Positions 10,071 to 53,776 of a DNA stretch of 64,000 nt are shown one piece after another. Made by a program: the position numbers and the translations under genes. The notes beneath the pieces are model-generated. The model was not told where the DNA came from. It saw nothing but the letters and a program-made list of their open reading frames with translations, and searched no databases. The stretch spans positions 1 to 64,000 of IMG/VR virus record IMGVR_UViG_3300034117_001582. One strand, written 5' to 3'. Within the stretch, counting starts at the first letter, position 1, and each line of letters opens with the position of its first letter.

Positions 10071-10478
10071 TCATCTGTAATTATCATCACTTCCATCATC
10101 CATGTCCTCATCGTTCTCAAGACCACGCCATACACTATCATAATCAGGATTATCAGCAAAACCTAATGCTCCACTTTTACTACCTTCTAAATCTCTAATA
10201 TAATTCTTTAAAAGATTAATAACTTGGTCTATCCTTTCTGCTCTTTGTCTTGGACTTACTTTTTTACTCAAACTATGTTGACTTGATAAATATCCAAATT
10301 GTCCTGGTTCAGAAAAAAGATTACCTTCATCCTCTCTAAAGAATATATCATCTAATTTTCTTTCAAAATCTAATTCTTTGTCTTCTTTTTTATTTGATTT
10401 AAATCCATCACCTTCGTTGACAATTCTTCTAACTATACGAGTTAAATCTCTTTCTGTTAATCTCATCACTCTTTTCAT
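10071..10478 (-). CDS. leader-bearing hypothetical protein (MKRVMRLTERDLTRIVRRIVNE)
   Basis: leader nearly identical to that of 53276..53776. Confidence 0.8.
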   Translation of the reverse strand: MKRVMRLTERDLTRIVRRIVNEGDGFKSNKKEDKELDFERKLDDIFFREDEGNLFSEPGQFGYLSSQHSLSKKVSPRQRAERIDQVINLLKNYIRDLEGSKSGALGFADNPDYDSVWRGLENDEDMDDGSDDNYR

Positions 10479-10537
10479 ATTAATAGTTTTATATATAAAT
10501 ATGTCTATTCATGAAAAACGTAATCATTAATGTTTTT

Positions 10538-11035
10538 TTATTTTATTTCAAATGCACATCTCATGATTTTTTTGGTTTTAGTGGCATCTTCAGGGTTTCC
10601 AATTACAACACCATCTTTGATTGTAAACGCATGTCGGTTAACAAGAACAAAGAATGTGCCCTTTGGGTTTTGTTTAACAAATGTCCCCACAGTCATGTTT
10701 CTTTTCTTTGTCTCACCTTTGATTGTTACATCATACATTAATGATCTTAACATTTGGTCATTATGTCTTACCCCAACAGGACAAACCTTTTTACCATTAA
10801 CCTTAAACAAACTGTCACCCATTTTGACAAGTTTGGATACCGTTCCGTATGTACCATTTCTTGGTTTTCTTCCAAATTCATCGGCAACATACCTATGAGC
10901 ATAATCATAAGATACTTCAAATGAGGATGCAAATGCTCTAACAACACAATCATTTCTTTCGCCTTTGGCAGTTGCTGATTCCGCATATCCTTTGATTGCC
11001 GTTCCTGTTGCTTCGTATGGTAGTTTGTTTTTCAT
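10538..11035 (-). CDS. hypothetical protein, possible Cys-His peptidase-like fold
   Basis: NDCVVRA and RHAFTI; start at MKNKL after a TATCTTTG promoter. Confidence 0.6.
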   Translation of the reverse strand: MKNKLPYEATGTAIKGYAESATAKGERNDCVVRAFASSFEVSYDYAHRYVADEFGRKPRNGTYGTVSKLVKMGDSLFKVNGKKVCPVGVRHNDQMLRSLMYDVTIKGETKKRNMTVGTFVKQNPKGTFFVLVNRHAFTIKDGVVIGNPEDATKTKKIMRCAFEIK

Positions 11036-11107
11036 ACTACAAAGATAATAAAAAAAATTGATATAAAAAAAAGGCATTGAAAAAAAATTCAACACCTTTT
11101 TAATAAT

Positions 11108-11178
11108 AAGTTGTGGCGGGACTCAAACCTGCGACACGTCCGAAATCGGATTGCTCTAACCAACTGAGCTACACAACT
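11108..11178 (-). ncRNA. tRNA-like RNA or pseudo-tRNA with collapsed anticodon loop
   Basis: AGTTGTG/CACAACT acceptor, canonical D arm GCTC-AGTTGGTTA-GAGC, anticodon arm TCCG-ATTT-CGGA, T-loop TTTGAGT. Confidence 0.75.
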
Positions 11179-11374
11179 TAATTTTTCGTTTTAAGGTCAC
11201 CCAAAAAACATCATCAATTAACCTAAATTAATTATAGGACTTCTTTTTCAGAAAAGAAAGCGATTTTCTCTTCATATTCAAACATTTCTTTGATAAACTG
11301 AAAATAGTCCTCTGAATTAATAAATTCATAATGTTGTTGTTCAAAAACGTCTTCCATAATTTTAATTTTTTTAG

Positions 11375-11448
11375 TGATTCCGAAAGGATTCGAACCTTTA
11401 ACCCTCGCCTTAGAAGGGCGATGCTCTATCCAGTTGAGCTACGGAACC
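11375..11448 (-). tRNA. tRNA-Arg(UCU)
   Basis: cloverleaf, loop CTTCTAA. Confidence 0.93.
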
Positions 11449-11454
11449 AAACGG

Positions 11455-11631: not shown

Positions 11632-11671
11632 ATCCTTTTCTTTTTACAAATATATGGAACTTATTTCAAAT

Positions 11672-11721: not shown

Positions 11722-12288
11722 TTATAATCCTGATTTACTTTTTTCAACTGACTTATCACCTGTTGCTGTAGTCATTTTTAATTTATTTTTTTGAACATCT
11801 CCTTGTTGGTTATATTTTGTAACTTGTTTGTATTTTGTACCATCATCGTCAGTTCCTTTTTGAACTTGTCTTCCTGTATTACCTTTTGGGTTCAATAATA
11901 ATGAAACCGCTTTTTTAACTTCTTCGGCAGTATTATATCCTTGACCGTTATTTGTCGCATTAACATAGTGGTTAGAACCTTCAGGAAACATTTTTATTTT
12001 ACCATCAGTCATCCCACTGTGGTGTTGCACATAAAATTTACCACTAGGGTGTACCTTATATCCTTCAGGACATGTTGTTCCAGTTAATTGAAAATAATTT
12101 TCACTATCTCTTACACACATTGTTTTTTCTACTTTCATAATATACAAATCACCGGTATTTGCAGCAGCAACATCTTTGAATGGGCCTTCCACTTTGGTGT
12201 ATTGTTCATTCAATAGACCCTTTTTAAATCCTTCATGTAAATTAAGGATTCTTCTTTTCTCTTCTTCACTAATAATAAACTTTCTCAT
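11722..12288 (-). CDS. leader-bearing hypothetical protein
   Basis: MRKFIISEEEKRRILNLH...LLNEQ. Confidence 0.75.
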   Translation of the reverse strand: MRKFIISEEEKRRILNLHEGFKKGLLNEQYTKVEGPFKDVAAANTGDLYIMKVEKTMCVRDSENYFQLTGTTCPEGYKVHPSGKFYVQHHSGMTDGKIKMFPEGSNHYVNATNNGQGYNTAEEVKKAVSLLLNPKGNTGRQVQKGTDDDGTKYKQVTKYNQQGDVQKNKLKMTTATGDKSVEKSKSGL

Positions 12289-12289: not shown

Positions 12290-12589
12290 TTACTGTCCAA
12301 TAATTAAATCGTTAGGGTCGAAACCATTTGGTCCTTTAACCCTATCTTCTAATTCGTCATACATATATGATTTAACCACAGATGTAACTGATTGTTCTGC
12401 CTGAGCAATTTTTGATTCCATCCAGTCATCAAGTTGTTCACCTTCCTCCATTAACTCCCACATTTTGTAACAAAGTGTTGCCATGGTAAACAATTGTTGT
12501 TTTGCCATGTAAGAACCTTCGTGGTGTTCTTCTTTGATTGTTCTAACAACTTGTTTAAATTGTTTTTCTGTTATAATGATTTTGCTCAT
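12290..12589 (-). CDS. leader-bearing hypothetical protein
   Basis: MSKIIITEKQFKQVV..IKEE; MAKQQL...DWMESKIAQAE phage motif. Confidence 0.75.
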   Translation of the reverse strand: MSKIIITEKQFKQVVRTIKEEHHEGSYMAKQQLFTMATLCYKMWELMEEGEQLDDWMESKIAQAEQSVTSVVKSYMYDELEDRVKGPNGFDPNDLIIGQ

Positions 12590-13109: not shown

Positions 13110-13478
13110 TTACCATGTTCTACATGCCCAATATCTTGGTTTCCATCTTGGTCCAGGATTATCACAATTGTGTCTTGCTCTAAACGATTTTCTTCTTTCA
13201 GGATTATTTTTTTTAATCCTCATTATTTTACCTTTGGCTGATTTTCCACCAAAACCAAAGTTTACTTTAACAACAGTACCTTTGTCGTTTTTAACGTACA
13301 CCTTGGACTTTTTAATATCTCCCTGCATAATCTTACCAAGTTGGACGTTTCTACCCTGATACTCAGCTTCGTTTAAAAAATTAACCTTTTCAACTGATCC
13401 ATATATATCCTCATATAAATATTTTTTTATAGAGAATTCTTCATTTAATACTTTTCTAATAATTGATTCTATAATCAT
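13110..13478 (-). CDS. conserved basic phage protein
   Basis: EAEYQGR...VNFG...RRKSFRARHNC...YWAC; leader MIIESIIRKVLNEE. Confidence 0.8.
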   Translation of the reverse strand: MIIESIIRKVLNEEFSIKKYLYEDIYGSVEKVNFLNEAEYQGRNVQLGKIMQGDIKKSKVYVKNDKGTVVKVNFGFGGKSAKGKIMRIKKNNPERRKSFRARHNCDNPGPRWKPRYWACRTW

Positions 13479-13561
13479 ATTAATAAATATCATATAAAAT
13501 AAAATAGGCATTATTTAAATTAATATTTGTGATATTAAAAAAAAAATATTAAGTTTGTAGT

Positions 13562-14315: not shown

Positions 14316-15680
14316 TTATAAATATGGTTTAATAAATTTATCAAATCTAGTGTCAGGAGCATCAGGTTTACCGGCTTTCAATGCTAACTTGAAGAATTCG
14401 TCATTTGGATCGATTTGTTTACTTGGGAAGATACCTCTTGGATCATACTGTTTATCTACTTGTTGTTGTAAAACTTTTGTAATTTTACCATTTGTGTCCC
14501 AATATATTTTCCACCTAACAACAGGTCTAACGTATGGCTGACCATTTACGTTCATTTGATATTTAATCTCGTAACTAGACATGTGTGAGTCTGCCGATTT
14601 TTTATTTTCGTCTGCCACAAGTAGTGTCTGACTACACGAATCAAAGGTGTTTGGTCGTGCGCCAGCATTTAATGAGTTTTTACCGTTACAGAAATAAGCA
14701 CCGGTTAATACAAACCCATCTCTACCTAATTTTTTGAACTCATCAATATTATTTGGTATTTTACCTCCAATTGGATCTTTTGGTGTATTATCTGTTGAGC
14801 TACTTGTCTCTTCAACACCACAAATATCAATTTCAACTATAACTATTTGTCCGGGATTTGGGTATTTACCCGTATTACGTGTATCGTCAACCTTACCTCC
14901 AGTATCAACAACATAAGATAATACTTGAGGTTTTAATGTAGGACTTAATGCTATGCCCTTTGATGGTAAAGTTTTAACTAATTCAGCATAAAGACCGTTA
15001 GCCCTATCAACCGCTAATTGTTTGTTTTTAGCAAACTGATTAGGATCATAAGCAGGATTATCAGGATATTTTTGAAAATTATAATTATTATCCATTTCAG
15101 GTTTTACCGGTTTACCTCCGTATCTATTACTAGCCCCACCAGTTAATCTAATACCACTAACCACAGCCTTACCTTTAACATAACTCGCATTAGTTACTTC
15201 GTTAGTCTTTATCCCATTAATTAGATTTGCCATGAATTTTGTCATATTTGCAGGGTTTGATGTTACCCTTACAGGGAAAGACCCTATAACCGTAATTTTA
15301 GTACATTTAGCACCAAAACTAGAAGGTGTAACACCTTCCTTAGCAATTTGTGTTGATGCAGAAACCCCACTATCAACGTCAGGTCCTGAATCGTTACTTT
15401 TAGGCTTAGTATCGGCTAAGGTTCCACAACCAGGTGTTCTACCAAAAATTTTAGTACATATGGCTTCTCTACCTTTAGATGTTGTATGTTTTTTCCAATT
15501 TGGGTTCACCCCATCGGTTTTCATTGCATAAAAATATTCGTCACCTTCTTTTTTATATTGATATGGGTCCCCCTGACCACCTTGCTTAACTTCTTGTTCA
15601 TTTAATAACTTTTTATAGTTATTATGCATCTCAATTATTTGTTTTTTTTCTTTTTCATTCAGGATAAACATATTTTTCAT
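14316..15680 (-). CDS. leader-bearing protein with OmpA-C-like segment
   Basis: MKNMFILNEKEKKQIIEMH leader; LTGGASN...NKQLAVDRA. Confidence 0.65.
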   Translation of the reverse strand: MKNMFILNEKEKKQIIEMHNNYKKLLNEQEVKQGGQGDPYQYKKEGDEYFYAMKTDGVNPNWKKHTTSKGREAICTKIFGRTPGCGTLADTKPKSNDSGPDVDSGVSASTQIAKEGVTPSSFGAKCTKITVIGSFPVRVTSNPANMTKFMANLINGIKTNEVTNASYVKGKAVVSGIRLTGGASNRYGGKPVKPEMDNNYNFQKYPDNPAYDPNQFAKNKQLAVDRANGLYAELVKTLPSKGIALSPTLKPQVLSYVVDTGGKVDDTRNTGKYPNPGQIVIVEIDICGVEETSSSTDNTPKDPIGGKIPNNIDEFKKLGRDGFVLTGAYFCNGKNSLNAGARPNTFDSCSQTLLVADENKKSADSHMSSYEIKYQMNVNGQPYVRPVVRWKIYWDTNGKITKVLQQQVDKQYDPRGIFPSKQIDPNDEFFKLALKAGKPDAPDTRFDKFIKPYL

Positions 15681-15713
15681 AAACAGAATTTATAATAAAT
15701 ATCCTATAAAATA

Positions 15714-15754: not shown

Positions 15755-17272
15755 TTACGCAACCCTTACTTTATTTCCGGGGTTTATTTTTAACCCATTG
15801 GCATAATTAAGTTGGTTTAATATTTCCATAGTTAAACCAGCACCTGCAAATTTTTGTAATATTTTTTGTAGAGTGTCTCCTTTAGCGATTGTATAATATA
15901 ATTTAGTAACTTTTCCAACAATTTGTTTTGTAATATTTTTATCTCCTACCGCAGCCACTTTTTTCCCTAAACTTACTAAATCAAAATGGCTACCTTTAGC
16001 CACTTTCATATTTTGAGTTAATGCTCCTGTACTGAAATATTTCTTCATTCCTTTCCCAATTTCTAAAAAAAAGTTTTCAACCGACTTAGTAAATTTTTGG
16101 AGTGGCTTCATTACTTTTCCAATTAATGGAATTTTAGTGGTAATCCATGTAAATGCTTGTCCTATTTTTGTAATTATTGTTCCTCCACCTGTTACAATTT
16201 TTTGTAACCATGGAACTACGGTTTTAGTAATTGCGGGAGTTGTTTTTGAGGCGCTTGCAATTCCTGGTATAAATGCTTGAATTGATTTAATTGTGGTTAA
16301 AGTGGTTTTAACTCCCTTGAATATTGCCGCCGCAGCCCCCGAACCTAATAATCCGACACAATCAGTTAATACATTATACCAATTCCAATTTCCTTTTGCG
16401 AATCCTTGATACCCAATGTCATAAACAGTTAGTAATCCCCAAGCTATCAAATTTACCAAATTACCAACACCCGTTAGAGCTAAAACTATTTGTATAGCTA
16501 TTCCGGCAACTCCATTTAAAAAATTTCTAAATGTTTCAACCCAATCTTCGAATGTCATTTTTTTTATTTTTTCCCAATTGTCGTAAACTTTTTTTGCGTC
16601 CATTCCTAATTTGATTGTATTTAATCCTGGAACCAAATACGCAAACTCACTATCCAAAAATTTAGTAATATAAGGTGTAACAGTTTGAACCACTTTTTTT
16701 CCGATCTCAATACCTTTATTTATTCCTGTTTTTACTGTTTGATATCCTTTTTGTAACCCAGTTTTTACTGTTTGCACTCCGGCCTTTGCTAGTGCAACAC
16801 CTTTATTTGCTACTGTTTTTACTGCATTAACACCTGAGTCGACTAAATTACCAACACCGTCCCAAAATCCTTGTTCATTTAATGAAATGTTAAAATTTCT
16901 TCTATTAAGGAATCCACATTCGTAAAGTACGCTACTTTTTAAAAAATCAAAAAAGTTATACAAAGTTCTAAATGAATGATTGGAACTTTCTAATAACATA
17001 TTATTTGTAAAATTATTATCAAATTGCTCATGTATGAAATTTGTTCTTGGGAATATATCTAAAACGTAATTATCCATCATCTCTTCAAGATATTCTTGTC
17101 TTTTAGATTCGTTCATTTTTTTCATGTTTTTAATGTGAAGACCTTTTTGGCTATTCAATTCATTAAATAAAGTTCCAAAAACTTTTTTAAAATTTGACAT
17201 TTCCATTTGTTGTTTTGTTTTTTGAGCAATTAAGTCAACTTGGTTTTCAGATAGTAAATATATGTTTTTCAT
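15755..17272 (-). CDS. leader-bearing protein with hydrophobic helical bundle and C-terminal LysM
   Basis: YTIAKGDTL...INPGNKVRV LysM; long Gly/Ala-rich hydrophobic helices. Confidence 0.75.
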   Translation of the reverse strand: MKNIYLLSENQVDLIAQKTKQQMEMSNFKKVFGTLFNELNSQKGLHIKNMKKMNESKRQEYLEEMMDNYVLDIFPRTNFIHEQFDNNFTNNMLLESSNHSFRTLYNFFDFLKSSVLYECGFLNRRNFNISLNEQGFWDGVGNLVDSGVNAVKTVANKGVALAKAGVQTVKTGLQKGYQTVKTGINKGIEIGKKVVQTVTPYITKFLDSEFAYLVPGLNTIKLGMDAKKVYDNWEKIKKMTFEDWVETFRNFLNGVAGIAIQIVLALTGVGNLVNLIAWGLLTVYDIGYQGFAKGNWNWYNVLTDCVGLLGSGAAAAIFKGVKTTLTTIKSIQAFIPGIASASKTTPAITKTVVPWLQKIVTGGGTIITKIGQAFTWITTKIPLIGKVMKPLQKFTKSVENFFLEIGKGMKKYFSTGALTQNMKVAKGSHFDLVSLGKKVAAVGDKNITKQIVGKVTKLYYTIAKGDTLQKILQKFAGAGLTMEILNQLNYANGLKINPGNKVRVA

Positions 17273-17303
17273 TTTCTTTTTAATTATAAATATATAAAGA
17301 AAC

Positions 17304-19747: not shown

Positions 19748-20104
19748 ATGAATCTTTTCATTAATGATAATATGTTTAAATGTAAAGTTTGCGTTACACC
19801 AAACTCAATTACAGATGGGATGAAAAATAAAACATTCAACATGAATTTTAATGGTATGTTTTTCATTATGCCAAACAAATCTCAACAATCGTTTTGGATG
19901 TATGAATGTATAACACCATTAGATATTGTTATGATTGATGGTGATACTATTACAAAAATACATCATAATTGCTTACCTTGTGAGGTTGAGACCTCTTGTG
20001 AAGAATACTCTGGTTATGGTAATTACATATTAGAACTTCAAGGAGGTACCTGTCATGACTCTAATATCAAAGAGGGTGACCTTATTAGTACTACCCTTTA
20101 TTAA
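19748..20104 (+). CDS. DUF192 family protein
   Basis: GMFF..FWM...PLDIV...YILELQGG. Confidence 0.8.
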   Translation: MNLFINDNMFKCKVCVTPNSITDGMKNKTFNMNFNGMFFIMPNKSQQSFWMYECITPLDIVMIDGDTITKIHHNCLPCEVETSCEEYSGYGNYILELQGGTCHDSNIKEGDLISTTLY

Positions 20105-21671
20105 TATAATCATTTAAAACTTTAACGAATTCTTGTTGTATCGCTTTGGTTAATTGAACATAAGATGTGATATTATCCGTAGCGACTACTTGAGTATTTG
20201 TCCCTTCTTTTTCTATTTGTCTCATTGCCGCAAGTATTTGTGGGTCAGATAGTCTTTTATATTTAGATAATTTTGATTTAATATCTTTTACAAAACTATT
20301 ATTACCTTTGTAATCACTAATAACCGTTAATCTATTATCGTCATACACAACCACCGCTTCTTTTTTATTTCTATGTAGATAACTAATACCTGAAATGTTT
20401 GTAATACATTTATGTCCACCTGAATTAGCATTAATAACATCCCAACCATTAACCGTAATTCTATCCAATAAGTCTTTTTGTTTGTCTGTTAAATTTCTAT
20501 AAAGTTTTTCAGAAATATTACCAATAATGGTTAATAGCTTATCATCGGCGTTTGCGTTAAATGATTCTCTACTTCCATATATGGCAATTAAATCTTTTAG
20601 TGTGAACCCAACTGACTCGTATTCGGCTTGTATTTCAGATAGTCTTTTAAGTGTTCCAAATGTAATCTTCATTCCTTTTAATTCACTTTCAAATTTACCC
20701 AATACTTCATTTTTCATTTCACCTAAATCAATACCCTTTAACGCCCTATCCTCTTTGAATGGGTTACAAGAAGCTTGTACTAATCCTAATGGCCAAGCAA
20801 TAACTATAAAGTCAGCATCGGGATTGTTTTTAAATGGTGTATATCTATCATAAGAACCTGGTTTAATCATAGACCCACCACCGTACTGTACAATAATACT
20901 ACCCACTCTTGTTACGTTTGGATTCTCTTTTTGTTTTTCAATATAATTTGCTTGGTTTTTAACCAAATCTTCAGTACTTGCATACCCTTTAGTTGATATT
21001 TGTTTTTTAATATTATTTAAAATACTTAAAAGTGATGGCTGAGCATTTAATACTATCTGTTCTAAAAACTCTGGTTTGTTTTTAAATGCCAATAATAATT
21101 TATTTGCAACCAATCCCATTAAAAACTTGTTTGATTTTAAACTACTATCCTTATCAAATTTAAGTAAGTAATTCATAACCATTTCAGGTGATATTTTGTT
21201 AACCGCAAAATTTGCAGAGTCTACCGTCGATATGATATTAATATCTTCTGTTGGAAATATGTCTTTTGGTGATACAATTTGTGATATTGTTTCTATGTTT
21301 GATCTTGAAGATTTAAAACTTGTGGCGGTTTCTGGTTCAACACCAGCTTGTGTATCGTGGTGGTCAGTATGAATAACAAACATGGGTTTACCGTGAGCAA
21401 AATCAACCAAAACCGGCATCACATCACCACTAGCATCAGGTTTCTTAACTGAAAATTCTTTATCTCCGTATTGGATAACCTCAGCATCAACCACTTTAAT
21501 CCCGTAGTTTTCTAAATAACTTTTCATTCCTATCGCAGTGGTAACACCATCTAAATCTTGATGAAAATAAATTTTAGCCTTTTTGTAACGTTTTGATAAT
21601 TCATTAATATTTCTAATCCCCGATTCGTTAAGCAATCGTTTGTACTGTGATTCCGTTATTACCATTTTCAT
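20091..21671 (-). CDS. DHH-family phosphoesterase with N-terminal leader
   Basis: FHQDLDG, VDFAH, TDHH, SGGH motifs. Confidence 0.8.
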   Translation of the reverse strand: MKMVITESQYKRLLNESGIRNINELSKRYKKAKIYFHQDLDGVTTAIGMKSYLENYGIKVVDAEVIQYGDKEFSVKKPDASGDVMPVLVDFAHGKPMFVIHTDHHDTQAGVEPETATSFKSSRSNIETISQIVSPKDIFPTEDINIISTVDSANFAVNKISPEMVMNYLLKFDKDSSLKSNKFLMGLVANKLLLAFKNKPEFLEQIVLNAQPSLLSILNNIKKQISTKGYASTEDLVKNQANYIEKQKENPNVTRVGSIIVQYGGGSMIKPGSYDRYTPFKNNPDADFIVIAWPLGLVQASCNPFKEDRALKGIDLGEMKNEVLGKFESELKGMKITFGTLKRLSEIQAEYESVGFTLKDLIAIYGSRESFNANADDKLLTIIGNISEKLYRNLTDKQKDLLDRITVNGWDVINANSGGHKCITNISGISYLHRNKKEAVVVYDDNRLTVISDYKGNNSFVKDIKSKLSKYKRLSDPQILAAMRQIEKEGTNTQVVATDNITSYVQLTKAIQQEFVKVLNDYINKG

Positions 21672-21705
21672 AATAATAAATACTCTATAAAGTAAAAAAT
21701 CCCAT

Positions 21706-22909: not shown

Positions 22910-23188
22910 TTAGACATTTTTTTCTAAATTATCAATATGGTGTTGAAGATACCACATCGCTTTCTTAAGGTCCTCCAATTCTTTTTCTTTATTTTTCTTT
23001 CCTGCTCTTGAAATATACTTAACCGTATTACCCAAAGAAAATCCTAAGTCCCAAGCATCAATAACCTTGATTGCCTCGTATTCATTATTTTCTCCTCCGT
23101 AATGTTGTGGATGGTTTATTTGTTCTATTTTTGGTGGGGGACACTGACAAAGTCCGGCGCCACCACATATACATTCTTGTTCCATCAT
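22910..23188 (-). CDS. DUF3310 family protein
   Basis: INHPQHY...GNTVKYISRAGKK..EDLKKAMWYL. Confidence 0.88.
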   Translation of the reverse strand: MMEQECICGGAGLCQCPPPKIEQINHPQHYGGENNEYEAIKVIDAWDLGFSLGNTVKYISRAGKKNKEKELEDLKKAMWYLQHHIDNLEKNV

Positions 23189-25431: not shown

Positions 25432-26640
25432 TTAATTATGTCTCATTACGTGATACCATTTATCATTCACCTTAATCTCATTATCGGCACCATCATACCC
25501 ATTAAGAATTTCTCCGTAATCACTGTCTCGTAATATGTCTTCACAAACTCCATCAATATCAACAAATTCTAAAAGATATTTAGAATCAAATCCCATATCT
25601 TCTAAATAACTTGGGAAATCTCTAGAATTTTCTTCAACAAAATTATCTATCACCTCTTCAATTGTGTCCTCATCATAATCCCCTTCAGGGTCTTCTTTAA
25701 TTTCTTCAATAATATCTTCTATACTTGTTATTTCCTCTTCAATTTCTTCAGTTTCTTCATCAGTTAATTCTTCATTTTCCAATTTATAATTTAACCTTTC
25801 TATTTTTTGAGTATAAATTACAACGTACTTTTCTTGTTGTTGTGAAAGTTCTTTTTCTATCCCATAAGCATCTGGGTCATTTCTTACGGCGTCTTCATGA
25901 ATATCATATAACCAACTTCTGACTTGCACCATATCTAAATTATTCTCCCAAACACTTGTTCCAAAGGCTTCATAACCTAAATCTTCAATATCAGATTTAA
26001 TTTTTTCATAAGCCGCTGATTCAATATCATCATCAGAATATACAACCCATTCACTTTCAAACAACGAATCACCTAACCATTCAAACATATGACTATTTCC
26101 ATATCCTCCGTATTTTGTTTTATATATGAAATACTTGTCTTCTTTTACCTCTTCCCCATCTTCATTATCGTATGTTCCAATCTCCCTATTTTGGGATAAA
26201 TGGTTATATAACGCTTCGGTTTCATATGAAATATCATCACCATTATTTATGTCCCATTCTTTATTTTCTCTATATTCTTGGAGTTCATTTAATTTTTCTT
26301 TTAGTATTTTTTTTCTTTCGATTTGATACATCGTACTAGCCCAATAGTTTAATCTACCCTTAACTTTATTTTTATCAAAATATGTTATATTTGTGTATCC
26401 AATATCTAAATCCCCGTCAACATAATCAATACTATCAATGTTTGATACCGTTTTATTACTACTCAAGTCTAATTTACCGGTAATTTTAATTTTCTTACCT
26501 CTATAATCAGGTAACCGTTTAATTAATGCTCCGTCACCATTAACGTATTTTAATAAATCGATATAATCTTCAGGTGCGATATCAACCCACTCTTCTGACT
26601 GTTCTAATACCATATTTTTAATAATATTTTTTATTGACAT
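25432..26640 (-). CDS. acidic leader-bearing hypothetical protein
   Basis: start MSIKNIIKNMVLEQ after TATTTAT. Confidence 0.75.
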   Translation of the reverse strand: MSIKNIIKNMVLEQSEEWVDIAPEDYIDLLKYVNGDGALIKRLPDYRGKKIKITGKLDLSSNKTVSNIDSIDYVDGDLDIGYTNITYFDKNKVKGRLNYWASTMYQIERKKILKEKLNELQEYRENKEWDINNGDDISYETEALYNHLSQNREIGTYDNEDGEEVKEDKYFIYKTKYGGYGNSHMFEWLGDSLFESEWVVYSDDDIESAAYEKIKSDIEDLGYEAFGTSVWENNLDMVQVRSWLYDIHEDAVRNDPDAYGIEKELSQQQEKYVVIYTQKIERLNYKLENEELTDEETEEIEEEITSIEDIIEEIKEDPEGDYDEDTIEEVIDNFVEENSRDFPSYLEDMGFDSKYLLEFVDIDGVCEDILRDSDYGEILNGYDGADNEIKVNDKWYHVMRHN

Positions 26641-26727
26641 ATAATATAAATACTTTCCATTTACAAATGATACTTTTATAGTTATCAAATATTTATATAA
26701 CAAATAAACTTATTAAAATTTTTAATC

Positions 26728-32955: not shown

Positions 32956-33117
32956 ATGGAAAAAAAAGAAGCAACACAAGTAACAGGATGTAAACAATGT
33001 CAAAAAGGTTTAAGTACCACACAAAAAGGTTTAGTTGTGCTATCTATGTATATTTTAGGTACATCGGTCTTTGGGACTATTGAATTAATCAAATATTTAG
33101 TTGAATTCCTTAAGTAA
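32956..33117 (+). CDS. small membrane protein with CxxC
   Basis: GCKQCQ + TM; upstream TATTTAT. Confidence 0.6.
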
Positions 33118-36463: not shown

Positions 36464-37804
36464 TTATTGTGTTTTTCGGTTATACCCTATTAAATTTTTA
36501 ATTTTTCCCATTTCTGAAATAACTTTTTTGTCTTCAGTAGATTCTTCAACCGCGTTTAAAACACTTTGTGCGGTTTTCTTACCTTTCATTGAGCCTTTCT
36601 TAGTTACGTCACCAGCAACCTCAATAGTGTCTTGTGGGTATCTCTTATATGACGCATTCATTTGTTCTTGACCATATAAGTTGTCATCATAATTCTTTTT
36701 GAATTTTTCACCAACTTTACTTGGTACAACATTACCTAATGGTTTACCTTCTTCATCAAATTCAGCATTTCCTGTGGTTCTATGACCCTTCAAATATTTT
36801 TCAATTTTCTTATCATCAGGCTTAATCTCATCATAAACAAGATTAGTCATACCAGGATATGAAAACGCATCGATATATTCATCAACCGCTTCTGATGGTG
36901 TATATTTTTTAAGTGATTCTTTTCTTTTATCCAAGTCATAATTTCCTTCAGGAAAGCTTGTTGGGTCCATTTCATAATCACCTTTAGAACCATCCTTTAG
37001 ATATTCTTTCATTTTTTTAGCAACACTTTTAATATAATTGTCATTTTCTTTTTTAGATTGACCTAAAGTAGATTTAAGTATATTTTGAGCACTTGGTGCT
37101 TTACCTTTTTTCTTTTCTTCTTTAACTATGTTTTCAATAATATCTATAATTTCAGATTCTGTAAAATAAACTTTAGATTCTTTTCTTAACATTTTAAAAT
37201 CTTCTCTATCAATTCTATTATTTTTGTTTCTATCAATTCTACTTTGATTTCCGTAAAGTTTTTCGTCTAATTCAAATTCCTCAGAATCTCCTTTTCTTAA
37301 CATTTTAAAATCTTCTCTATCAATTCTATTATTTTTGTTTCTATCAATTCTACTTTGATTTCCGTAAAGTTTTTCGTCTAATTCAATTTCATAAGTGTCT
37401 CCACATTCCTCACATACATCTTCGTCTATTTCTTCATCACCCATATCGGTATAACTATCAGATGCGTCATCATATCCTTCAGGTCCTCTATATGCAGGAC
37501 CATTTTCGCCTCTATAGTCATCACCTCTAAGAAGGTTTTCAATATCTTCAATAGACATTTTGTTTGGTAATCTTTTTTTACCTAATCTTGGGTGTCCGTC
37601 ATCCATACCGCCAAGTTCTTGAATGTTACCTTCGTACGTATTTCCACATTCTTCACACATTTCACCTTCGTTCATTTCTGAACCACATGATTCACACATT
37701 TTGGAACCTTCGTTTTCAAATAACCGGTTTTTAATATTTGAGATTCTACCTGAAAACTCTTCAGATACCACTCTATTTACGATTTTCATAATTTCTCTAT
37801 TCAT
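36464..37804 (-). CDS. acidic putative head/core protein with CxxC motifs and a duplicated EF-hand-like module
   Basis: CESCG/CEECG; ELDEKLYGNQSRIDRNKNNRIDREDFKMLRK twice; internal VYFTESEIIDIIENIVKEE. Confidence 0.7.
   Translation of the reverse strand: MNREIMKIVNRVVSEEFSGRISNIKNRLFENEGSKMCESCGSEMNEGEMCEECGNTYEGNIQELGGMDDGHPRLGKKRLPNKMSIEDIENLLRGDDYRGENGPAYRGPEGYDDASDSYTDMGDEEIDEDVCEECGDTYEIELDEKLYGNQSRIDRNKNNRIDREDFKMLRKGDSEEFELDEKLYGNQSRIDRNKNNRIDREDFKMLRKESKVYFTESEIIDIIENIVKEEKKKGKAPSAQNILKSTLGQSKKENDNYIKSVAKKMKEYLKDGSKGDYEMDPTSFPEGNYDLDKRKESLKKYTPSEAVDEYIDAFSYPGMTNLVYDEIKPDDKKIEKYLKGHRTTGNAEFDEEGKPLGNVVPSKVGEKFKKNYDDNLYGQEQMNASYKRYPQDTIEVAGDVTKKGSMKGKKTAQSVLNAVEESTEDKKVISEMGKIKNLIGYNRKTQ
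37180..37386. repeat. direct repeat of ~96 nt with 111-nt period
   Basis: 37180-37275 matches 37291-37386. Confidence 0.9.
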
Positions 37805-37825
37805 AACTAATAAATATCTTTAAGT

Positions 37826-41957: not shown

Positions 41958-42773
41958 TTACATGTATTCAAATAAATCTGAACATTCGTTTCTTAATTTA
42001 CGAAGTGCTTTTTCTTTGATTTGACGAACACGTTCCTTAGTTAAAGAAAAGTCAGACCCAATATCTTCTAATGTACGTGGTGTTCCTGTGATACCGTAAT
42101 AATCCTCAACAATCGCACGTTCTCTGTCATCAAGAACAGACATAATACCCATCATCTTTTCTTTTAGTATGTCCTGTGTTGAAAATACTTCGTCAGGTGA
42201 GTCCACATTTTCATTTTTGATAATATCAATTAAAGTATCACCATCCTCATTGATGTGCATATCCAAGTCAATCATTCTTGGTAGGTTTGCAAACTTATCC
42301 GACAAATCTTTATTTGTTTTTTCGTTTTCACGTTTTTCTTTTTGCATATCCTGAACAACATTAACCGGAAGTCGGATAGTGCGTGAATTATCGTTTAGTG
42401 ATTGTAGAATTGATTGTTTAATCCACCATACCGCATATGAAATGAATCGGTTTTTCTTTGTCCAATCAAAGTTTTTAATCGCCTTCATTAATCCAAAGTT
42501 CCCTTCAGCAATTAAATCAGATAAATCAACACCTTGATTTTGATATTGTTTTGCCACTGTGATAACAAAACGTAAGTTACCCTCAAGCATTTCTTTTTGA
42601 ATTGCATCTTTTTCACGTTGTGAACAATCTTCCGAAGCGATTCTTTCGCCTAAGGCCCGTTCTCTCTCGGGTGTCATAACTTTTAATTTTCTAATGTCCT
42701 TTAAATAAAATTGGATTTCATCCTGATTTAAAGGGTTAGTTGATTTAATCTCTCCCATTTTGTCTTTTTCCAT
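41958..42773 (-). CDS. RNA polymerase sigma-70 family factor (RpoD/SigA-like, no region 1.1)
   Basis: NLRFVITVAKQY, DLIAEGNFGL, FISYAVWWIKQ, TLEDIG..TKERVRQI. Confidence 0.95.
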   Translation of the reverse strand: MEKDKMGEIKSTNPLNQDEIQFYLKDIRKLKVMTPERERALGERIASEDCSQREKDAIQKEMLEGNLRFVITVAKQYQNQGVDLSDLIAEGNFGLMKAIKNFDWTKKNRFISYAVWWIKQSILQSLNDNSRTIRLPVNVVQDMQKEKRENEKTNKDLSDKFANLPRMIDLDMHINEDGDTLIDIIKNENVDSPDEVFSTQDILKEKMMGIMSVLDDRERAIVEDYYGITGTPRTLEDIGSDFSLTKERVRQIKEKALRKLRNECSDLFEYM

Positions 42774-51096: not shown

Positions 51097-51309
51097 TTAA
51101 TCAAATAATTGAAAATCTTCGTTCACATGATTACAACTATTACACATATAAGTTGGGAATGGTACAATCGTGTCTTCGTGACTTCCTGTTAATAATTTAG
51201 GTACTTTCTTTAAAAGTACCACTTCTTTAAAAAATTTAGACCCACAATCACCACAAGTGATAGTTTCTTGTTGTCTTAAATCAATTTTTGGTTTGATGAT
51301 ATCATCCAT
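51097..51309 (-). CDS. zinc-ribbon protein
   Basis: CGDCG...CNSCNH. Confidence 0.75.
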   Translation of the reverse strand: MDDIIKPKIDLRQQETITCGDCGSKFFKEVVLLKKVPKLLTGSHEDTIVPFPTYMCNSCNHVNEDFQLFD

Positions 51310-51414
51310 ATTATTTTATTTGGTAGTTTATTTTTACTTCTCCTATTTGTTTGTCTAAGGTGGTGGTATAGTACCACACATATTCTATTGTGTTCATAAT
51401 ATAATTGTTTTAGT

Positions 51415-52272
51415 TTATTTAGTCAAATATTTTTTAATATCCATTTTGATAATTCCATCAAATACTTCTTTTGGTATTCTATATTCCACAAATTCCATTT
51501 CATCCGTTAAGTGAACGATAACCCCCCCAAAGAATTTAATATCACTGTATTTTGTCCCTTCCAACATCTTTAATAATAGTTTGGCATAGAACGGTAATTG
51601 AGTATTATAGTGACCAAGAGCATTGTTTGGTAACTTTTCAAATGGTTTTTTCATCGGTTTTGTAAAGGTATTTGTTTCCATGTTTTTTGGTTTGTTTGTT
51701 TTCCAGTCTGTTACAACAAAACCAAAACCGGTTTTTTCTTTATTTAACATTAACCAAAATTTATCGGGTTGGCCAGTGTATCCCAATTCAGGATGACCCA
51801 AAACCATCTCAGTATCAAGTAATACCGCACCCCTTTCTTTCATTAACTTTAAGAACTTTTTACCGGCTTTAATCATTCTATCCCCCTTCATAGTCATTTC
51901 AAGGTCACACTCATAAACAGGTTGTCTTACCTCTTTTTCTATATCAAACATAGATAGAGTTTCAGTTTCCAATTCAAAGTGGACTCTACTTCCCATGTTT
52001 GTTGATGTGGTCCCAGCTCTTGCCCATTCATCCATAAGTTGTTGTGCCTCATACGGGTCACCTTTTGCCTTTTTATACGCAATTTCTTCCGTTGGGAACT
52101 CATCGTAAAATAATTTCATTAGTTTAGATACGGATGGAAAATCTGACCTCACGTTTCCGTCCAAATCTTTCATCGTATATTTGTGGGCCTCTTCCTCAAA
52201 TGTTAATTCAAGTTCTTTTTGTTTTTCCGTGATTAATTCACGAAGTTCTTTTGCAATAATTTTTAAATCCAT
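51415..52272 (-). CDS. PD-(D/E)xK exonuclease (RecB/Cas4-like phage exonuclease)
   Basis: GSRVH, E, GQPD, DWKT, QL..Y. Confidence 0.85.
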   Translation of the reverse strand: MDLKIIAKELRELITEKQKELELTFEEEAHKYTMKDLDGNVRSDFPSVSKLMKLFYDEFPTEEIAYKKAKGDPYEAQQLMDEWARAGTTSTNMGSRVHFELETETLSMFDIEKEVRQPVYECDLEMTMKGDRMIKAGKKFLKLMKERGAVLLDTEMVLGHPELGYTGQPDKFWLMLNKEKTGFGFVVTDWKTNKPKNMETNTFTKPMKKPFEKLPNNALGHYNTQLPFYAKLLLKMLEGTKYSDIKFFGGVIVHLTDEMEFVEYRIPKEVFDGIIKMDIKKYLTK

Positions 52273-53189
52273 TATTTAATTTCCTCATAATATTTTTCTA
52301 TGTCTCCTCTGAGATCACAGACATCTTTATCTTTTGGTAGTTTTACCAATTTCACTCTGTTGTAAAGAACACCCCCATTTAATTTTTCAAATAACTTTTT
52401 GGCATCAAAATAAGCGTCACCATCCAAACATACTATGATATTCTTTTTTGCTTTTGTGTATAATTTTTCCCAAAGGTTCTCGTTAATATATTTTCCAAGT
52501 AAACATATTGAGTTATCCAAAAAGAAACTATCGAACACACCTTCAACAAGATATATGTCTTTTTTCCAATCAATTAAACTCTCGTTGAAAATTAAAAAGT
52601 CTTTTGCTGCTTCAGGGTTTTTATATTTTAATCTACTTCTTGGGTTCCAAGACCTTGATACAAAAAAGTTTAGTTCACCCTTTTTATTATATGATGGCAC
52701 AATAATTCTTCCAGCATATTCACCTTCAATACATAATCCTATATTGTACTTATTAATGATTTCATCTGTGATACCTCTATTTTTTAAGTAGTTGTACGCT
52801 TCTTTTCTTGGGATGTGTAGCGGATGGATTTCTTCAAACTTTTTATACTCCTTTGGTAGTTCCATCGGTTTATAAACTTTTTCTTTCTTTTCAAACTCAT
52901 CAGGTCTGATTAGTTTATAAACTTTTTTATCTTTTTTGTTTCCATATTTATCTATTAGTTTTCCTAAATGTCCGTATGTGCCATGCGTTTCAGCACATGC
53001 CCAACATTTATATACATGTTGATGGAAATTGATTTCAAGGTTACCCTTTCCATCAGTTTTATCTAACGCTTTAATATCGTATGAACATACCGGACAGTCA
53101 ACAGACATTTGACCGCTGGATTCATTAACGTTTTTTGGTTCACCAAACATCGTTAACAATAAATCAACCAATAGGGATTCTTCTTTCAT
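52272..53189 (-). CDS. DNA primase (Zn finger + TOPRIM)
   Basis: CPVC..CWAC; YLKNRGI; RIIVP; VEGVFD; LDGDA; KDVCD. Confidence 0.9.
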   Translation of the reverse strand: MKEESLLVDLLLTMFGEPKNVNESSGQMSVDCPVCSYDIKALDKTDGKGNLEINFHQHVYKCWACAETHGTYGHLGKLIDKYGNKKDKKVYKLIRPDEFEKKEKVYKPMELPKEYKKFEEIHPLHIPRKEAYNYLKNRGITDEIINKYNIGLCIEGEYAGRIIVPSYNKKGELNFFVSRSWNPRSRLKYKNPEAAKDFLIFNESLIDWKKDIYLVEGVFDSFFLDNSICLLGKYINENLWEKLYTKAKKNIIVCLDGDAYFDAKKLFEKLNGGVLYNRVKLVKLPKDKDVCDLRGDIEKYYEEIK

Positions 53190-53228
53190 ACCTAAAAGAT
53201 ACGAATTTTAAAGGGAATGTCAATTAAC

Positions 53229-53256
53229 AAAAAACCCACCTTTATGGGGTGGGTTT
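53229..53256 (-). terminator. intrinsic terminator
   Basis: AAACCCACC-loop-GGTGGGTTT. Confidence 0.7.
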
Positions 53257-53275
53257 AAAATATTATATTATTTTA

Positions 53276-53776
53276 TTATCTATTTCCGTCAAAGAAAAAC
53301 ATTTTTTGACGACAAACTAATTGATATTTTTGTTTTTTTCCGTCAGTCATTACCATTATTCTTTGTTCATAATCTACAACACCATTTTGGTCCATATTTT
53401 CTGTTGAAGTACCACCCTTTACTAATTTTTGTTTTGCTGTAATCTCAAAAGTTTCACCAGGTTCTACGGTAAAAGGCCCTCGCTCAACAATTGTCATGTT
53501 GTCATTCATAGGCATAATTTTCGTTATAGTAAGTGGTGCAGTTCCAGCATTTCTAAGACCCCTGAATTTAAATTCAATTGTTTGTCCAAATTCAACTTCA
53601 CCATCTCGGTTACGCACAACCATTGTTCCTACTAAAGGCCCCTTACGCATTTCAGCCTGCTGAGCTCCCTGTGTTGAAGGATTTGGCATACCTATAGGTC
53701 CTTCACCTTCTTCATTAATAACTCGTCTAACGATACGTGCTAAATCTGACTCAGTTAATCTTACTATTCTTTTCAT
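53276..53776 (-). CDS. leader-bearing DUF1573-like Ig-fold protein
   Basis: MKRIVRLTESDLARIVRRVINE; GEV..NAGTAPLTI..VEPGETFEI. Confidence 0.75.
   Translation of the reverse strand: MKRIVRLTESDLARIVRRVINEEGEGPIGMPNPSTQGAQQAEMRKGPLVGTMVVRNRDGEVEFGQTIEFKFRGLRNAGTAPLTITKIMPMNDNMTIVERGPFTVEPGETFEITAKQKLVKGGTSTENMDQNGVVDYEQRIMVMTDGKKQKYQLVCRQKMFFFDGNR

What the first reader, a model, noticed from the sequence alone, without database searches (positions are those of the whole stretch)
10071..53776. Shared N-terminal leader on unrelated cargo proteins: a putative capsid-targeting and protease-maturation system
Seen: unrelated proteins start with similar amphipathic leaders ending in [ILV]-x-E. Examples: MKRVMRLTERDLTRIVRRIVNE (10478), MKRIVRLTESDLARIVRRVINE (53776), MRKFIISEEEKRRILNLHE..LLNE, MKNMFILNEKEKKQIIEMH..LLNE, MSKIIITEKQFKQVVRTIKE, MKMVITESQYKRLLNE, MIIESIIRKVLNE, MSIKNIIKNMVLE, MAIRFTSILKDLIIE and MLKNL..NNLINE. 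Most follow TATTTAT. The cargo domains include DHH phosphoesterase, LRR, LysM, OmpA-like, Ig-like and HExxH. Known: T4 internal proteins carry a short capsid-targeting sequence removed by prohead protease gp21 after (I/L)-x-E. Inference: a modular tag that loads a dozen or more effectors into the head for injection.
Basis: partly seen in the sequence, partly recalled or inferred. Interest (0 to 1): 0.8.

Follow-up and report, generated by a model that had tools for sequence, protein, structure and literature searches.

The report
Shared head-targeting leaders on phage proteins
About one gene in five of this 292-kb T4-related jumbo phage of freshwater Bacteroidota starts with the same kind of short amphipathic helix ending in hydrophobic-x-Glu. 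This most likely marks the proteins for loading into the phage head and trimming by its T4-type head protease, which would be a far larger packaged-protein repertoire than any known phage has.

Summary
The window is the first 64 kb of a 291,867-bp virus genome from the bS21-encoding freshwater Bacteroidota jumbo phages. Local profile searches find at least 68 of about 353 genes with an N-terminal leader of six intergrading types. Hits sit at the initiator codon about 100 times more densely than inside proteins. Synonymous codons vary freely, so selection acts on the peptide. 94% of leaders end in [ILV]-x-E, against 37% of other N-termini.

The genome has a T4-type head module: Gp23 capsid protein, gp20 portal and a gp21-like S77 protease. 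The capsid residues aligned to T4's SFLTE|A, known from the literature (not from these tools) as the gp23 cleavage site, read L-I-N-E|A, the same ending as the leaders. Two conserved head-module proteins carry the motif, and their orthologues swap leader types, move the leader or shorten it, yet always keep hydrophobic-x-E.

Leader genes sit behind the motif [AG]TATTTAT, which is also found ahead of tail and head genes. The type A leader alone matches 8,053 protein clusters, and no Pfam or PHROG family covers it.

Packaging, cleavage and injection are inferred, not shown. Verdict: a new, greatly expanded variant of the T4 capsid-targeting/propeptide system (confidence about 0.6).

The parts
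10071..10478 (-). Type A leader gene (135 aa); leader MKRVMRLTERDLTRIVRRIVNE is encoded at 10413-10478
   Evidence: Profile A, 45.7 bits, starts at residue 1; no Pfam or PHROG family
10495..10501 (-). TATTTAT promoter-like motif, 16 nt before the ATG of 10071-10478
11722..12288 (-). Type E leader gene (188 aa); leader MRKFIISEEEKRRILNLHEGFKKGLLNE at 12205-12288; 1 nt after the upstream gene (operon)
   Evidence: Profile E, 24.7 bits; gap
12290..12589 (-). Type B leader gene (99 aa); leader MSKIIITEKQFKQVVRTIKE at 12530-12589
   Evidence: Profile B, 22.6 bits
13110..13478 (-). Type D leader gene (122 aa from the internal Met); leader MIIESIIRKVLNE at 13440-13478
   Evidence: Profile D, 16.1 bits; TATTTAT 4 nt upstream of this Met supports the start
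13483..13489 (-). TATTTAT motif, 4 nt before the ATG (leaderless-type spacing)
14316..15680 (-). Type E leader gene (454 aa); leader MKNMFILNEKEKKQIIEMHNNYKKLLNE at 15597-15680; cargo contains an OmpA-like peptidoglycan-binding fold
   Evidence: Profile E, 25.2 bits. AF2 model: leader helical (DSSP helices 9-20 and 22-28), low confidence (pLDDT <50) at 23-28, first strand from residue 30. Foldseek to OmpA-like domains 3td3 and 5u1h, prob 1.00. Homologues carry type E or type F leaders.
15695..15701 (-). TATTTAT motif, 14 nt before the ATG of 14316-15680
15755..17272 (-). Leader-like gene (505 aa; MKNIYLLSENQVDLIAQKTKQQME, below the profile threshold) with a C-terminal LysM domain
   Evidence: LysM E=3e-5, above the cut-off; TATTTAT at 17286-17292
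20091..21671 (-). Type B leader gene (526 aa); leader MKMVITESQYKRLLNE at 21624-21671; weak DHH-family hit
   Evidence: Profile B, 31.1 bits; DHH 19.8 bits, below the 28.1 cut-off
21676..21682 (-). TATTTAT motif, 4 nt before the ATG
36464..37804 (-). Weak type A-like leader gene (446 aa); leader MNREIMKIVNRVVSE at 37760-37804; EF-hand-like cargo
   Evidence: Profile A, 16.1 bits; EF-hand_7 E=1e-5, sub-threshold; TATTTAT at 37810-37816
53276..53776 (-). Type A leader gene (166 aa); leader MKRIVRLTESDLARIVRRVINE at 53711-53776; Ig-like (DUF1573-like) cargo
   Evidence: Profile A, 50.2 bits; DUF1573 20.5 bits, sub-threshold
53808..53814 (-). TATTTAT motif, 31 nt before the ATG of 53276-53776
4423..5076 (-). 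Leader-like gene (217 aa); MLKNLIIEKIVDRLKNNLINE at 5014-5076; below the profile threshold; TATTTAT at 5081-5087
   Evidence: HELEH string at residue 116 only
25432..26640 (-). Leader-like gene (402 aa, very acidic); MSIKNIIKNMVLE at 26602-26640; TATTTAT at 26646-26652
   Evidence: not profile-significant
30623..31990 (-). Leader-like gene (455 aa); MAIRFTSILKDLIIE at 31946-31990; weak LRR hit; TATTTAT at 32009-32015
   Evidence: not profile-significant
41958..42773 (-). Phage sigma-70-family factor, a candidate reader of the [AG]TATTTAT motif (inference only)
   Evidence: Sigma70_r2 E=4e-17 and Sigma70_r4 E=3e-16

Best explanation
The leaders are capsid (scaffold-core) targeting propeptides of a T4-type head-assembly system.

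Proposed mechanism: each protein is made late in infection with a 12-32-residue Arg/Lys/Ile/Leu-rich amphipathic helix. The helix binds the scaffolding core of the prohead, so the protein is co-assembled inside. The gp21-like S77 serine protease then cuts after the Glu of the terminal hydrophobic-hydrophobic-x-Glu. That frees the cargo inside the head, from which it leaves with the DNA at the next infection.

Shown here:
- the motif family, its restriction to N-termini and peptide-level selection;
- its interchangeability and positional mobility among orthologues;
- a T4-type head module with an S77 protease;
- the identity of the leader ending with the predicted capsid-protein cleavage site;
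- an upstream motif shared with structural genes.

Inferred: binding to the core, cleavage, packaging and ejection.
For: 1. T4-type head module: Gp23 capsid protein E=3e-73, Peptidase_S77 E=5e-25, Portal_T4 E=6e-74. The protease is 33% identical to T4 gp21, with the ELNHP and GVSSRG blocks conserved. T4 gp21 cuts after L/I-x-E, and the 10-residue IPIII capsid-targeting sequence is necessary and sufficient for packaging (PMC9026906).

2. The capsid-protein alignment puts T4's SFLTE|AEIGG opposite HLINE|A here; that this is T4's gp23 cleavage point is from my own knowledge. LINE|A occurs in 73/74 relatives. Leaders end VINE, IINE, LLNE, VLNE, LINE, VLKE and similar.

3. In the 150 best database hits to the type A profile, P1 is E in 193/197 motif copies and P3 is I/L/V/M in 197/197.

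4. Head-module protein x (150229-150948): the N-termini of its orthologues range from 8 to about 30 residues, but nearly all end [IL]-x-E|A-T followed by a Ser/Gly-rich stretch, like T4 IPIII/IPII MKTYQEFIAE|A. A second invariant hydrophobic-x-E|DLAVWFG junction precedes a Lys-rich, Cys-containing domain. A leader-like helix recurs at the C-terminus.

5. Head-module protein y (149774-150232): orthologues carry a type D leader, a type A leader, or none at the N-terminus with the motif inserted between the two domains. AF2 shows the leader as a separate helix (residues 2-13), a break at 14-20, then a confident helical domain.

6. Homologous cargo also swaps type E for type F.

7. [AG]TATTTAT precedes 16/23 spaced genes in the tail and head regions, 2/11 in the replication regions and 41/69 in the leader-rich region. 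It is enriched before leader genes (OR 4.9).

8. No leader is seen on any of the identified replication genes, tail proteins or proteins with a signal peptide. Cargo includes peptidoglycan-directed modules without secretion signals: lysozyme+LysM, PG_binding_1+GH19, LysM and OmpA-like. Such proteins could reach a new host's cell wall by ejection from the virion.

9. Near-complete relatives with type A leaders have the S77 protease and/or Gp23 (G007, G010, G012). The apparent exception, G011, simply breaks at the head module.

10. The protein between portal and protease (156575-157303) has 13 [ILV]xE sites against 6.4 expected, rank 2 of 265. The 516-aa acidic scaffold-like protein has 17 against 11.9.
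Against: - There is no proteomic or biochemical evidence that any leader protein is in virions or is cut.
- The residue after the Glu is mostly Q/N/D/S/E/G in leaders, whereas the capsid protein, protein x and T4 sites have Ala.
- 68 or more cargo species (19% of genes) exceeds anything documented. For comparison, 19 of the 89 virion proteins of 201phi2-1 are processed (PMC9026906).
- The leaders are longer and far more conserved than the 10-residue T4 sequence and share no detectable similarity with it. They could therefore serve another specific interaction.
- Internal copies exist, in 49 of the top hits and once in this genome.
- T4-type heads with an S77 protease do not imply leaders: none in Flavobacterium phage immuto, Microcystis phage Mel-JY01 or T4.
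- TATTTAT is not exclusive to structural genes; it also precedes the DnaB-like helicase, a methylase and thioredoxin. Its 'late' status is inferred.
Confidence: 0.6

Rival explanations
1. The helix is a permanent docking or oligomerisation tag that is never cleaved. It would attach many different adhesin-like or enzyme modules to a common partner, for example a virion-surface or hub protein or an intracellular scaffold.
For: The motif is strongly conserved over 20 or more residues and has a heptad-like amphipathic pattern. It works at internal and C-terminal positions in some proteins. Many cargo modules are adhesin-like: Ig-like, CarboxypepD_reg/Big_1, LRR, LysM and OmpA-like.
Against: The Glu at P1 and the hydrophobic residue at P3 are near-invariant, and they match the predicted capsid-protein maturation site. 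Orthologues of protein x keep only the short hydrophobic-x-E|A piece without the helix, so that piece is conserved in its own right. Conservation drops sharply right after the Glu.
Confidence: 0.15
2. The conserved 5' coding sequence acts at the RNA or translation level. It would serve as an initiation signal for leaderless late mRNAs read by ribosomes carrying the phage-encoded bS21.
For: TATTTAT ends 4-6 nt before the ATG for 20 leader genes, which suggests leaderless or near-leaderless mRNAs. The phage encodes bS21, proposed to favour late phage transcripts (PMC9723584). The leaders are A-rich and mostly start Met-Lys.
Against: Synonymous codons vary at about the rate expected from codon usage while the amino acids stay fixed out to residue 22. 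The same motif occurs internally and at C-termini in relatives. 28 leader genes are internal to operons.
Confidence: 0.05
3. The leader is a recognition tag for a chaperone, unfoldase or regulated-proteolysis system in the infected cell, for example the phage's ClpB-like AAA+ protein or its DnaJ. It would time the activity or turnover of accessory proteins.
For: The genome encodes a ClpB/ClpA-like double-AAA+ protein (165090-167135). Its DnaJ-like protein (33097-34092) is recognised only from its N-terminal sequence and was not searched. N-terminal tags for AAA+ machines are known in general (my own knowledge).
Against: This does not explain why the ending matches the capsid cleavage site, why conserved head-module proteins carry the motif, or why the genes follow the motif shared with structural genes. 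No ClpP-type peptidase was looked for.
Confidence: 0.07
4. The similarity is only paralogy or compositional bias: recently duplicated genes in an AT-rich genome keep similar N-termini.
For: Some leader genes are tandem paralogues, for example at 244-250 kb and 255-259 kb. Lys, Ile, Asn and Glu are common in a 32% GC genome.
Against: Cargo domains are unrelated. Leaders swap between orthologous cargos. The N-terminal to internal density ratio is about 100. 8,053 clusters match at E<=1e-3 in 1.84 billion proteins, nearly all at residue 1. Codons are diverged.
Confidence: 0.03

Closest known systems
T4 capsid-targeting sequence of internal proteins IPI/IPII/IPIII (and Alt), removed by prohead protease gp21
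   Same: Both are short N-terminal peptides on otherwise unrelated proteins, ending in hydrophobic-x-Glu, in a phage with a gp23/gp20/gp21-type head. The tag is modular and cargo-independent. Protein x here resembles IPIII: a short propeptide ending I/L-x-E|A, then a basic domain.
   Different: There is no detectable sequence similarity. The leaders here are 12-32 residues rather than 10, fall into six intergrading types, and are much more conserved. The scale is 68 or more genes per genome rather than about 4. The residue after Glu is usually polar or acidic rather than Ala. Packaging and cleavage are untested here.
Propeptides of head and ejection proteins in phiKZ, 201phi2-1 and SPN3US, cut by gp175/gp245 (diverged gp21 homologues)
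   Same: These are jumbo phages in which many head proteins are processed after Glu by a gp21-related protease, with a large mass of internal or ejected proteins (PMC9026906).
   Different: The cleavage motif there is S/A-x-E with no shared leader family. There, 19 of the 89 virion proteins of 201phi2-1 are processed; here a single recognisable tag family marks 68 or more genes. This phage has a readily detected T4-type capsid protein and protease.
P1 DarB N-terminal packaging signal (Dar anti-restriction system)
   Same: An N-terminal segment of more than 9 and at most 30 residues is sufficient to send a heterologous protein into the capsid (PMC9024508).
   Different: It is a single protein's signal, not a shared family. 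P1 has a different head type, and no link to hydrophobic-x-E cleavage of the signal is described.
Polymorphic internal-protein loci of T-even phages, where diverse internal proteins share only a conserved targeting sequence
   Same: Diverse, fast-evolving cargo genes share only the conserved targeting sequence (PMC3012670).
   Different: Those loci hold a few genes. Here the leader genes fill about 86 kb of the genome (54 of the 122 genes at 190-276 kb), and the codons are too diverged for the leader to be a simple recombination cassette.
Encapsulin cargo-loading peptides (my own knowledge)
   Same: A short conserved peptide directs unrelated cargo into an HK97-fold shell.
   Different: Those peptides are usually C-terminal, are not cleaved, belong to a bacterial nanocompartment, and the cargo is not delivered to another cell.

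Membership tests
T4-type capsid-targeting/propeptide system | The genome encodes a gp21-type (Peptidase_S77) prohead protease | tested here: met
   154799-155509(-): PF03420 E=4.8e-25, above the cut-off; 33% identity to T4 gp21; confirmed by the whole-genome search
T4-type capsid-targeting/propeptide system | T4-type capsid protein (gp23) and portal (gp20), with an N-terminal capsid-protein propeptide ending in L/I-x-E | tested here: met
   PF07068 E=3e-73 and PF07230 E=6e-74. The residues aligned with T4's SFLTE|A read LINE|A; that SFLTE|A is the T4 cleavage site is from the literature, not from a tool. Conserved in 73/74 relatives. Cleavage itself was not observed.
T4-type capsid-targeting/propeptide system | Cargo proteins start with a short peptide ending in L/I(V)-x-E | tested here: met
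   63/67 leader genes (94%) against 37% of other N-termini. In the database hits P1 is E in 193/197 and P3 is hydrophobic in 197/197.
T4-type capsid-targeting/propeptide system | Sequence homology of the tag to the T4 sequence MKTYQEFIAE | tested here: not met
   The type A profile finds nothing in T4. T4 IPII and IPIII N-termini were read directly and show no similarity beyond the hydrophobic-x-E ending.
T4-type capsid-targeting/propeptide system | The tag is cargo-independent (transferable) | tested here: met
   Natural swaps occur: protein y orthologues carry type D, type A or an internal copy; homologues of 14316-15680 carry type E or type F; identical leaders sit on unrelated cargo in metagenomes. 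The experimental transfer test was not done.
T4-type capsid-targeting/propeptide system | Tagged proteins are found inside the head, and the tag is removed by the protease | not testable with these tools
   This needs virion proteomics or N-terminomics, or a protease assay. No cultured member with such data was found.
T4-type capsid-targeting/propeptide system | Expressed together with the head genes (late) | tested here: inconclusive
   The shared [AG]TATTTAT motif precedes 16/23 structural-region genes, 2/11 replication-region genes and 41/69 genes in the leader-rich region. No transcript data were usable: RNA runs hold only 5% of the sampled words, and as contigs.
bS21-encoding freshwater Bacteroidota jumbo phages (Chen et al. 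2022) | 290-330 kb, about 31-34% GC, with bS21 on the opposite strand inside the TerL-portal-protease-capsid module | tested here: met
   291,867 bp and 31.8% GC. A 64-aa bS21-like gene lies at 156088-156282(+), between the portal and protease genes, which are on the minus strand. bS21 was recognised by reading the sequence, not by a family search. The description matches PMC9723584.

The most novel reading that the evidence does not exclude
A family of interchangeable, position-tolerant address helices of about 20 residues loads roughly 70 different, mostly orphan proteins per genome into the head of a widespread clade of freshwater Bacteroidota jumbo phages. The cargo includes peptidoglycan binders and hydrolases, and the proteins are released by the head protease and co-injected. 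This would be the largest injected-protein repertoire known for any phage. It would also give a sequence-recognisable label, with more than 8,000 protein clusters for one subtype alone, for finding phage effectors in metagenomes.
Probability: 0.4. Interest if true: 0.85.

Novelty: new variant of a known kind. Interest (0 to 1): 0.72.

Why it matters
If the leaders are head-targeting propeptides, a simple N-terminal profile would flag the packaged and probably injected proteome of an abundant, uncultured group of lake phages, with no need for proteomics. That would turn thousands of orphan proteins into candidate early-acting effectors, for example for cell-wall penetration, anti-defence or host takeover.

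It would also show that the T4 capsid-targeting principle, known from about four proteins, can expand to a fifth of a genome. The natural tags are longer and much more conserved than the T4 sequence and tolerate different positions in the protein. They could be used for cargo loading into phage heads.

The clear hydrophobic-x-E logic also gives a directly testable prediction of mature N-termini for dozens of proteins.

Tried and rejected
- Nucleotide search of the phage collection with 7.4 kb of the window gave only trivial hits.
- tblastn of a 30-aa type A leader against 50,697 phage records gave no match even at E<=10. This may be a limit of short queries, so it is not evidence of absence.
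- Word-indexed protein search on the leader region returned only 11 hits. The exhaustive profile search was needed.
- ESM Atlas look-up of 53276-53776 gave only weak Ig-like leads.
- PHROGs found no family for eight of the nine leader or leader-like proteins tested; the ninth, protein y, matched an unknown-function family through its C-terminal domain. Pfam found nothing covering any leader.
- Foldseek on the protein y model found nothing.
- Literature searches for the motif strings and for leader, propeptide and jumbo-phage terms found no description of these leaders. The bS21-phage paper does not mention them.
- RNA runs held only about 5% of the sampled words, and as contigs.
- The idea that type A leaders occur in a phage without a T4-type head (G011, no S77, Gp23 or portal hit) was rejected. 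That contig ends exactly at the head module.
- An RNA-level or recombination-cassette explanation was rejected on codon divergence.
- A general 'core' profile did not add members beyond the training set.

Full report
**What the window is.** The window is the first 64 kb of a single 291,867-bp virus record with 31.8% GC and most genes on the minus strand. CheckV rates it 99% complete. It has no close relative among deposited phage genomes. Size, GC content, a bS21-like gene at 156088-156282(+) embedded antisense in the head module, and lake-metagenome relatives place it among the bS21-encoding Bacteroidota jumbo phages of Chen et al. 2022 (PMC9723584). The bS21 gene was recognised by reading its sequence, not by a family search. 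That paper does not mention the leaders.

**The observation.** I built profiles for six leader types and iterated them against the predicted proteins:
- A: MKKVIRLTESDLxRIVRRVINE
- B: MKIIITESQYxxLxE
- C: MNLQENIRRI...
- D: MRxLIKHILKEE
- E: xFIISEEEKxxIxxLH...LLNE
- F: LLEEIxRFKRLM

These recover 67 of 353 ATG-start genes, eight of them in the window, plus a type A gene with a GTG start. Types C, D and F overlap. Type D is in effect the C-terminal half of type A.

In a six-frame search every significant hit begins at the first start codon of its reading frame, apart from one internal copy and one leader-like segment at residue 29 of a 45-aa ORF. A core profile gives an N-terminal to internal density ratio of about 100. 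The leaders are rich in Arg, Ile, Leu and Glu, lack Gly and Pro, and are significantly amphipathic. Synonymous codons differ about as much as codon usage predicts while the residues stay fixed. Selection therefore acts on the peptide, not on RNA or through recent gene conversion.

**The ending.** 94% of leader genes have [ILV]-x-E ending at residues 8-30, against 37% of other N-termini. This comparison is partly circular. In type A the Glu at position 22 is invariant and conservation collapses right after it. Among the 150 best database hits, P1 is Glu in 193/197 motif copies and P3 is Ile/Leu/Val/Met in 197/197.

**The head machinery.** At 150-161 kb lie a T4-type large terminase, a gp20-type portal, a Peptidase_S77 (gp21-like) protease, a 516-residue very acidic scaffold-like protein and a Gp23-type major capsid protein. 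The protease is 33% identical to T4 gp21. T4 gp21 cuts after L/I-x-E, and the 10-residue N-terminus of IPIII is sufficient for capsid targeting (PMC9026906; PMC3012670).

Aligning the capsid protein with T4 gp23 puts T4's SFLTE|AEIGG opposite HLINE|A here and QIVSE|A in Flavobacterium phage immuto. That SFLTE|A is T4's gp23 cleavage point rests on my own knowledge, not on a tool result. LINE|A is present in 73 of 74 relatives, followed by a variable stretch. This is the same ending as the leaders: VINE, IINE, LLNE, VLNE, LINE.

**Comparative evidence from the head module.** Two small conserved genes flank the capsid gene.

- *Protein x* (150229-150948). Its orthologues have N-termini from 8 to about 30 residues, and nearly all end [IL]-x-E|A-T followed by a Ser/Gly-rich stretch, for example MKKNRISE|AT and MIERTIKNILKE|AT. 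A second invariant hydrophobic-x-E|DLAVWFG junction comes before a Lys-rich, Cys-containing domain, and a leader-like helix recurs near the C-terminus. This resembles T4 IPIII/IPII (MKTYQEFIAE|A) and the double-ended processing described for T4 Alt.
- *Protein y* (149774-150232). It has a type D-like leader here and in three close relatives, a type A leader in most others, and in one relative no N-terminal leader but a type A motif inserted between its two domains. The AlphaFold2 model shows the leader as a separate helix, a break exactly after the Glu, then a confident helical domain.

Homologues of the window gene 14316-15680 likewise carry either type E or type F leaders, always ending hydrophobic-x-E-Q. 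The leaders are therefore interchangeable modules, and the hydrophobic-x-E piece is conserved even where the helix is not.

**Expression signal.** [AG]TATTTAT[AT] is the most enriched 8-mer upstream of genes, at 15-fold. It precedes 39/67 leader genes against 63/286 others. 26 of the 28 leader genes without it are 14 nt or less from, or overlap, the upstream gene. Among genes with an upstream gap of at least 25 nt, it occurs at 16/23 in the tail and head regions, 2/11 in the replication regions and 41/69 in the leader-rich region. It also precedes a few non-structural genes. I read it as a probable late promoter, possibly served by the phage sigma-70-family factor at 41958-42773. No transcript data could be used.

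**Cargo.** Most cargo has no family. The identifiable modules are:
- Phage_lysozyme+LysM (257849-258772)
- PG_binding_1+GH19 (199624-201228)
- CarboxypepD_reg+Big_1 (190592-192517)
- LysM (15755-17272)
- an OmpA-like peptidoglycan-binding fold in 14316-15680 (AF2 plus Foldseek)
- weaker EF-hand, DHH, LRR and DUF1573 hits

None of these has a secretion signal, whereas other genes of this phage carry ordinary signal or lipoprotein peptides. No leader is seen on any of the identified replication enzymes, tail proteins or baseplate proteins. Cell-wall-directed modules made in the cytoplasm without export signals fit proteins that reach the next host's envelope by ejection. This is inference.

**Distribution.** The type A profile alone matches 8,053 clusters (50% identity representatives) at E<=1e-3 among 1.84 billion proteins, nearly all at residue 1. 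Some proteins carry second or third internal copies. Large metagenomic phage contigs carry types A-F together. A 294-kb relative has eight type A genes and a 274-kb relative has at least 28 leader genes.

Near-complete genomes with type A leaders have the S77 protease and/or Gp23. One apparent exception is a contig that ends at the head module. T4, Flavobacterium phage immuto and Microcystis phage Mel-JY01 have T4-type heads but no such leaders. The leaders are therefore a clade-specific elaboration.

**Interpretation.** The best-supported reading is a T4-like capsid-targeting/propeptide system on a much larger scale: an amphipathic helix for affinity to the scaffold core, and hydrophobic-x-E for release by the S77 protease. 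I put this at about 0.6.

The main weaknesses are these:
- There is no direct evidence for packaging or cleavage.
- The residue after the Glu is polar or acidic instead of Ala.
- The number of putative cargo species is unprecedented.
- The strong conservation of the helix could reflect some other specific interaction.

Rivals are an uncleaved docking tag (0.15), an AAA+/chaperone or degradation tag (0.07), a translation-level signal for leaderless late mRNAs (0.05) and paralogy or composition (0.03).

**Novelty.** The principle is known from T4 and has analogues in P1 DarB (PMC9024508) and in phiKZ-like phages. This leader family, its six subtypes, its interchangeability and its scale are not in Pfam, PHROGs or the searchable literature. 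I class it as a new variant of a known kind.

Noticed in passing
window 13483-13489, 21676-21682, 5081-5087, 26646-26652, 37810-37816, and genome-wide: [AG]TATTTAT ends only 4-6 nt before the ATG at 35 genes, 20 of them leader genes. If it is a -10-like element, these transcripts would be leaderless or nearly so. That is notable in a phage that encodes its own ribosomal protein bS21.
   Followed up: partly
window 41958-42773 (-): Phage-encoded sigma-70-family factor (regions 1.2, 2 and 4). It is a candidate reader of the TATTTAT motif, but no -35-like element is seen, only a T-rich patch at -16 to -13.
   Followed up: partly
L001:12088-12282 (+) = genome 156088-156282: A 64-aa ribosomal protein bS21-like gene lies antisense inside the head module, as described for the bS21 phage clades (PMC9723584).
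   Followed up: partly
window 7675-11448 (-): Cluster of eight tRNA genes (Met x2, Asp, Glu, Ile, Trp, His, Arg-TCT), interleaved with the type A leader gene 10071-10478.
   Followed up: no
upstream regions genome-wide, e.g. before the gp32-like gene at 88130-88987: TAnnTTTG, the Bacteroidota -7 promoter box (from my own knowledge), is also enriched upstream of genes (TATATTTG 7.5-fold). This fits a Bacteroidota host and a separate early promoter class.
   Followed up: partly
L005:18713-20000 and L006:1-308 = genome 244713-246308 (-): This 531-aa protein has a leader at its N-terminus and a second, internal copy (LKESIRKVLKEE) near residue 338. It may be a fusion of two leader genes or a protein cut into two products.
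   Followed up: no
L005:1321-1944 (-) = genome 227321-227944: A type A leader gene that starts with GTG (GTG TCA AGA ATA ATA AGA...). ATG-only gene calling misses it, so the count of 67 is a minimum.
   Followed up: yes
L001:12575-13303 (-) = genome 156575-157303: This 242-aa protein between portal and protease has 13 [ILV]xE sites against 6.4 expected (rank 2 of 265). It is a candidate prohead-core protein that is cut into peptides, like T4 gp67/gp68.
   Followed up: partly
window 54466-64000 and beyond (59993-60280, 63994-64506, 64503-64790): A run of Thr/Gly/Cys-rich proteins, large and small, whose N-termini share 'GGTSPY..C'-like motifs. They lie at the start of the tail/baseplate region and were not examined.
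   Followed up: no
window 23185-24312 (-): Glutamine-synthetase-like gene (Gln-synt_N plus Gln-synt_C), an auxiliary metabolic gene in a phage.
   Followed up: no
L001:5774-6232 (+), L001:16962-17633 (-), L001:6229-6948 (-): Three head-module proteins carry related Lys-rich domains, preceded by hydrophobic-x-E junctions or leaders. In 160962-161633 the domain matches Pfam DUF3008; in protein y and in protein x (whose domains also contain Cys) it is DUF3008-like only by eye or matches a PHROG of unknown function. They could be DNA-binding internal proteins.
   Followed up: partly
L183:42-530 (G011, 274-kb relative): The contig of this relative ends exactly at the head module. Its protein y orthologue is the first gene, and the capsid, protease, portal and terminase genes are missing. 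Absence of head genes in '93% complete' records can therefore be an assembly break.
   Followed up: yes
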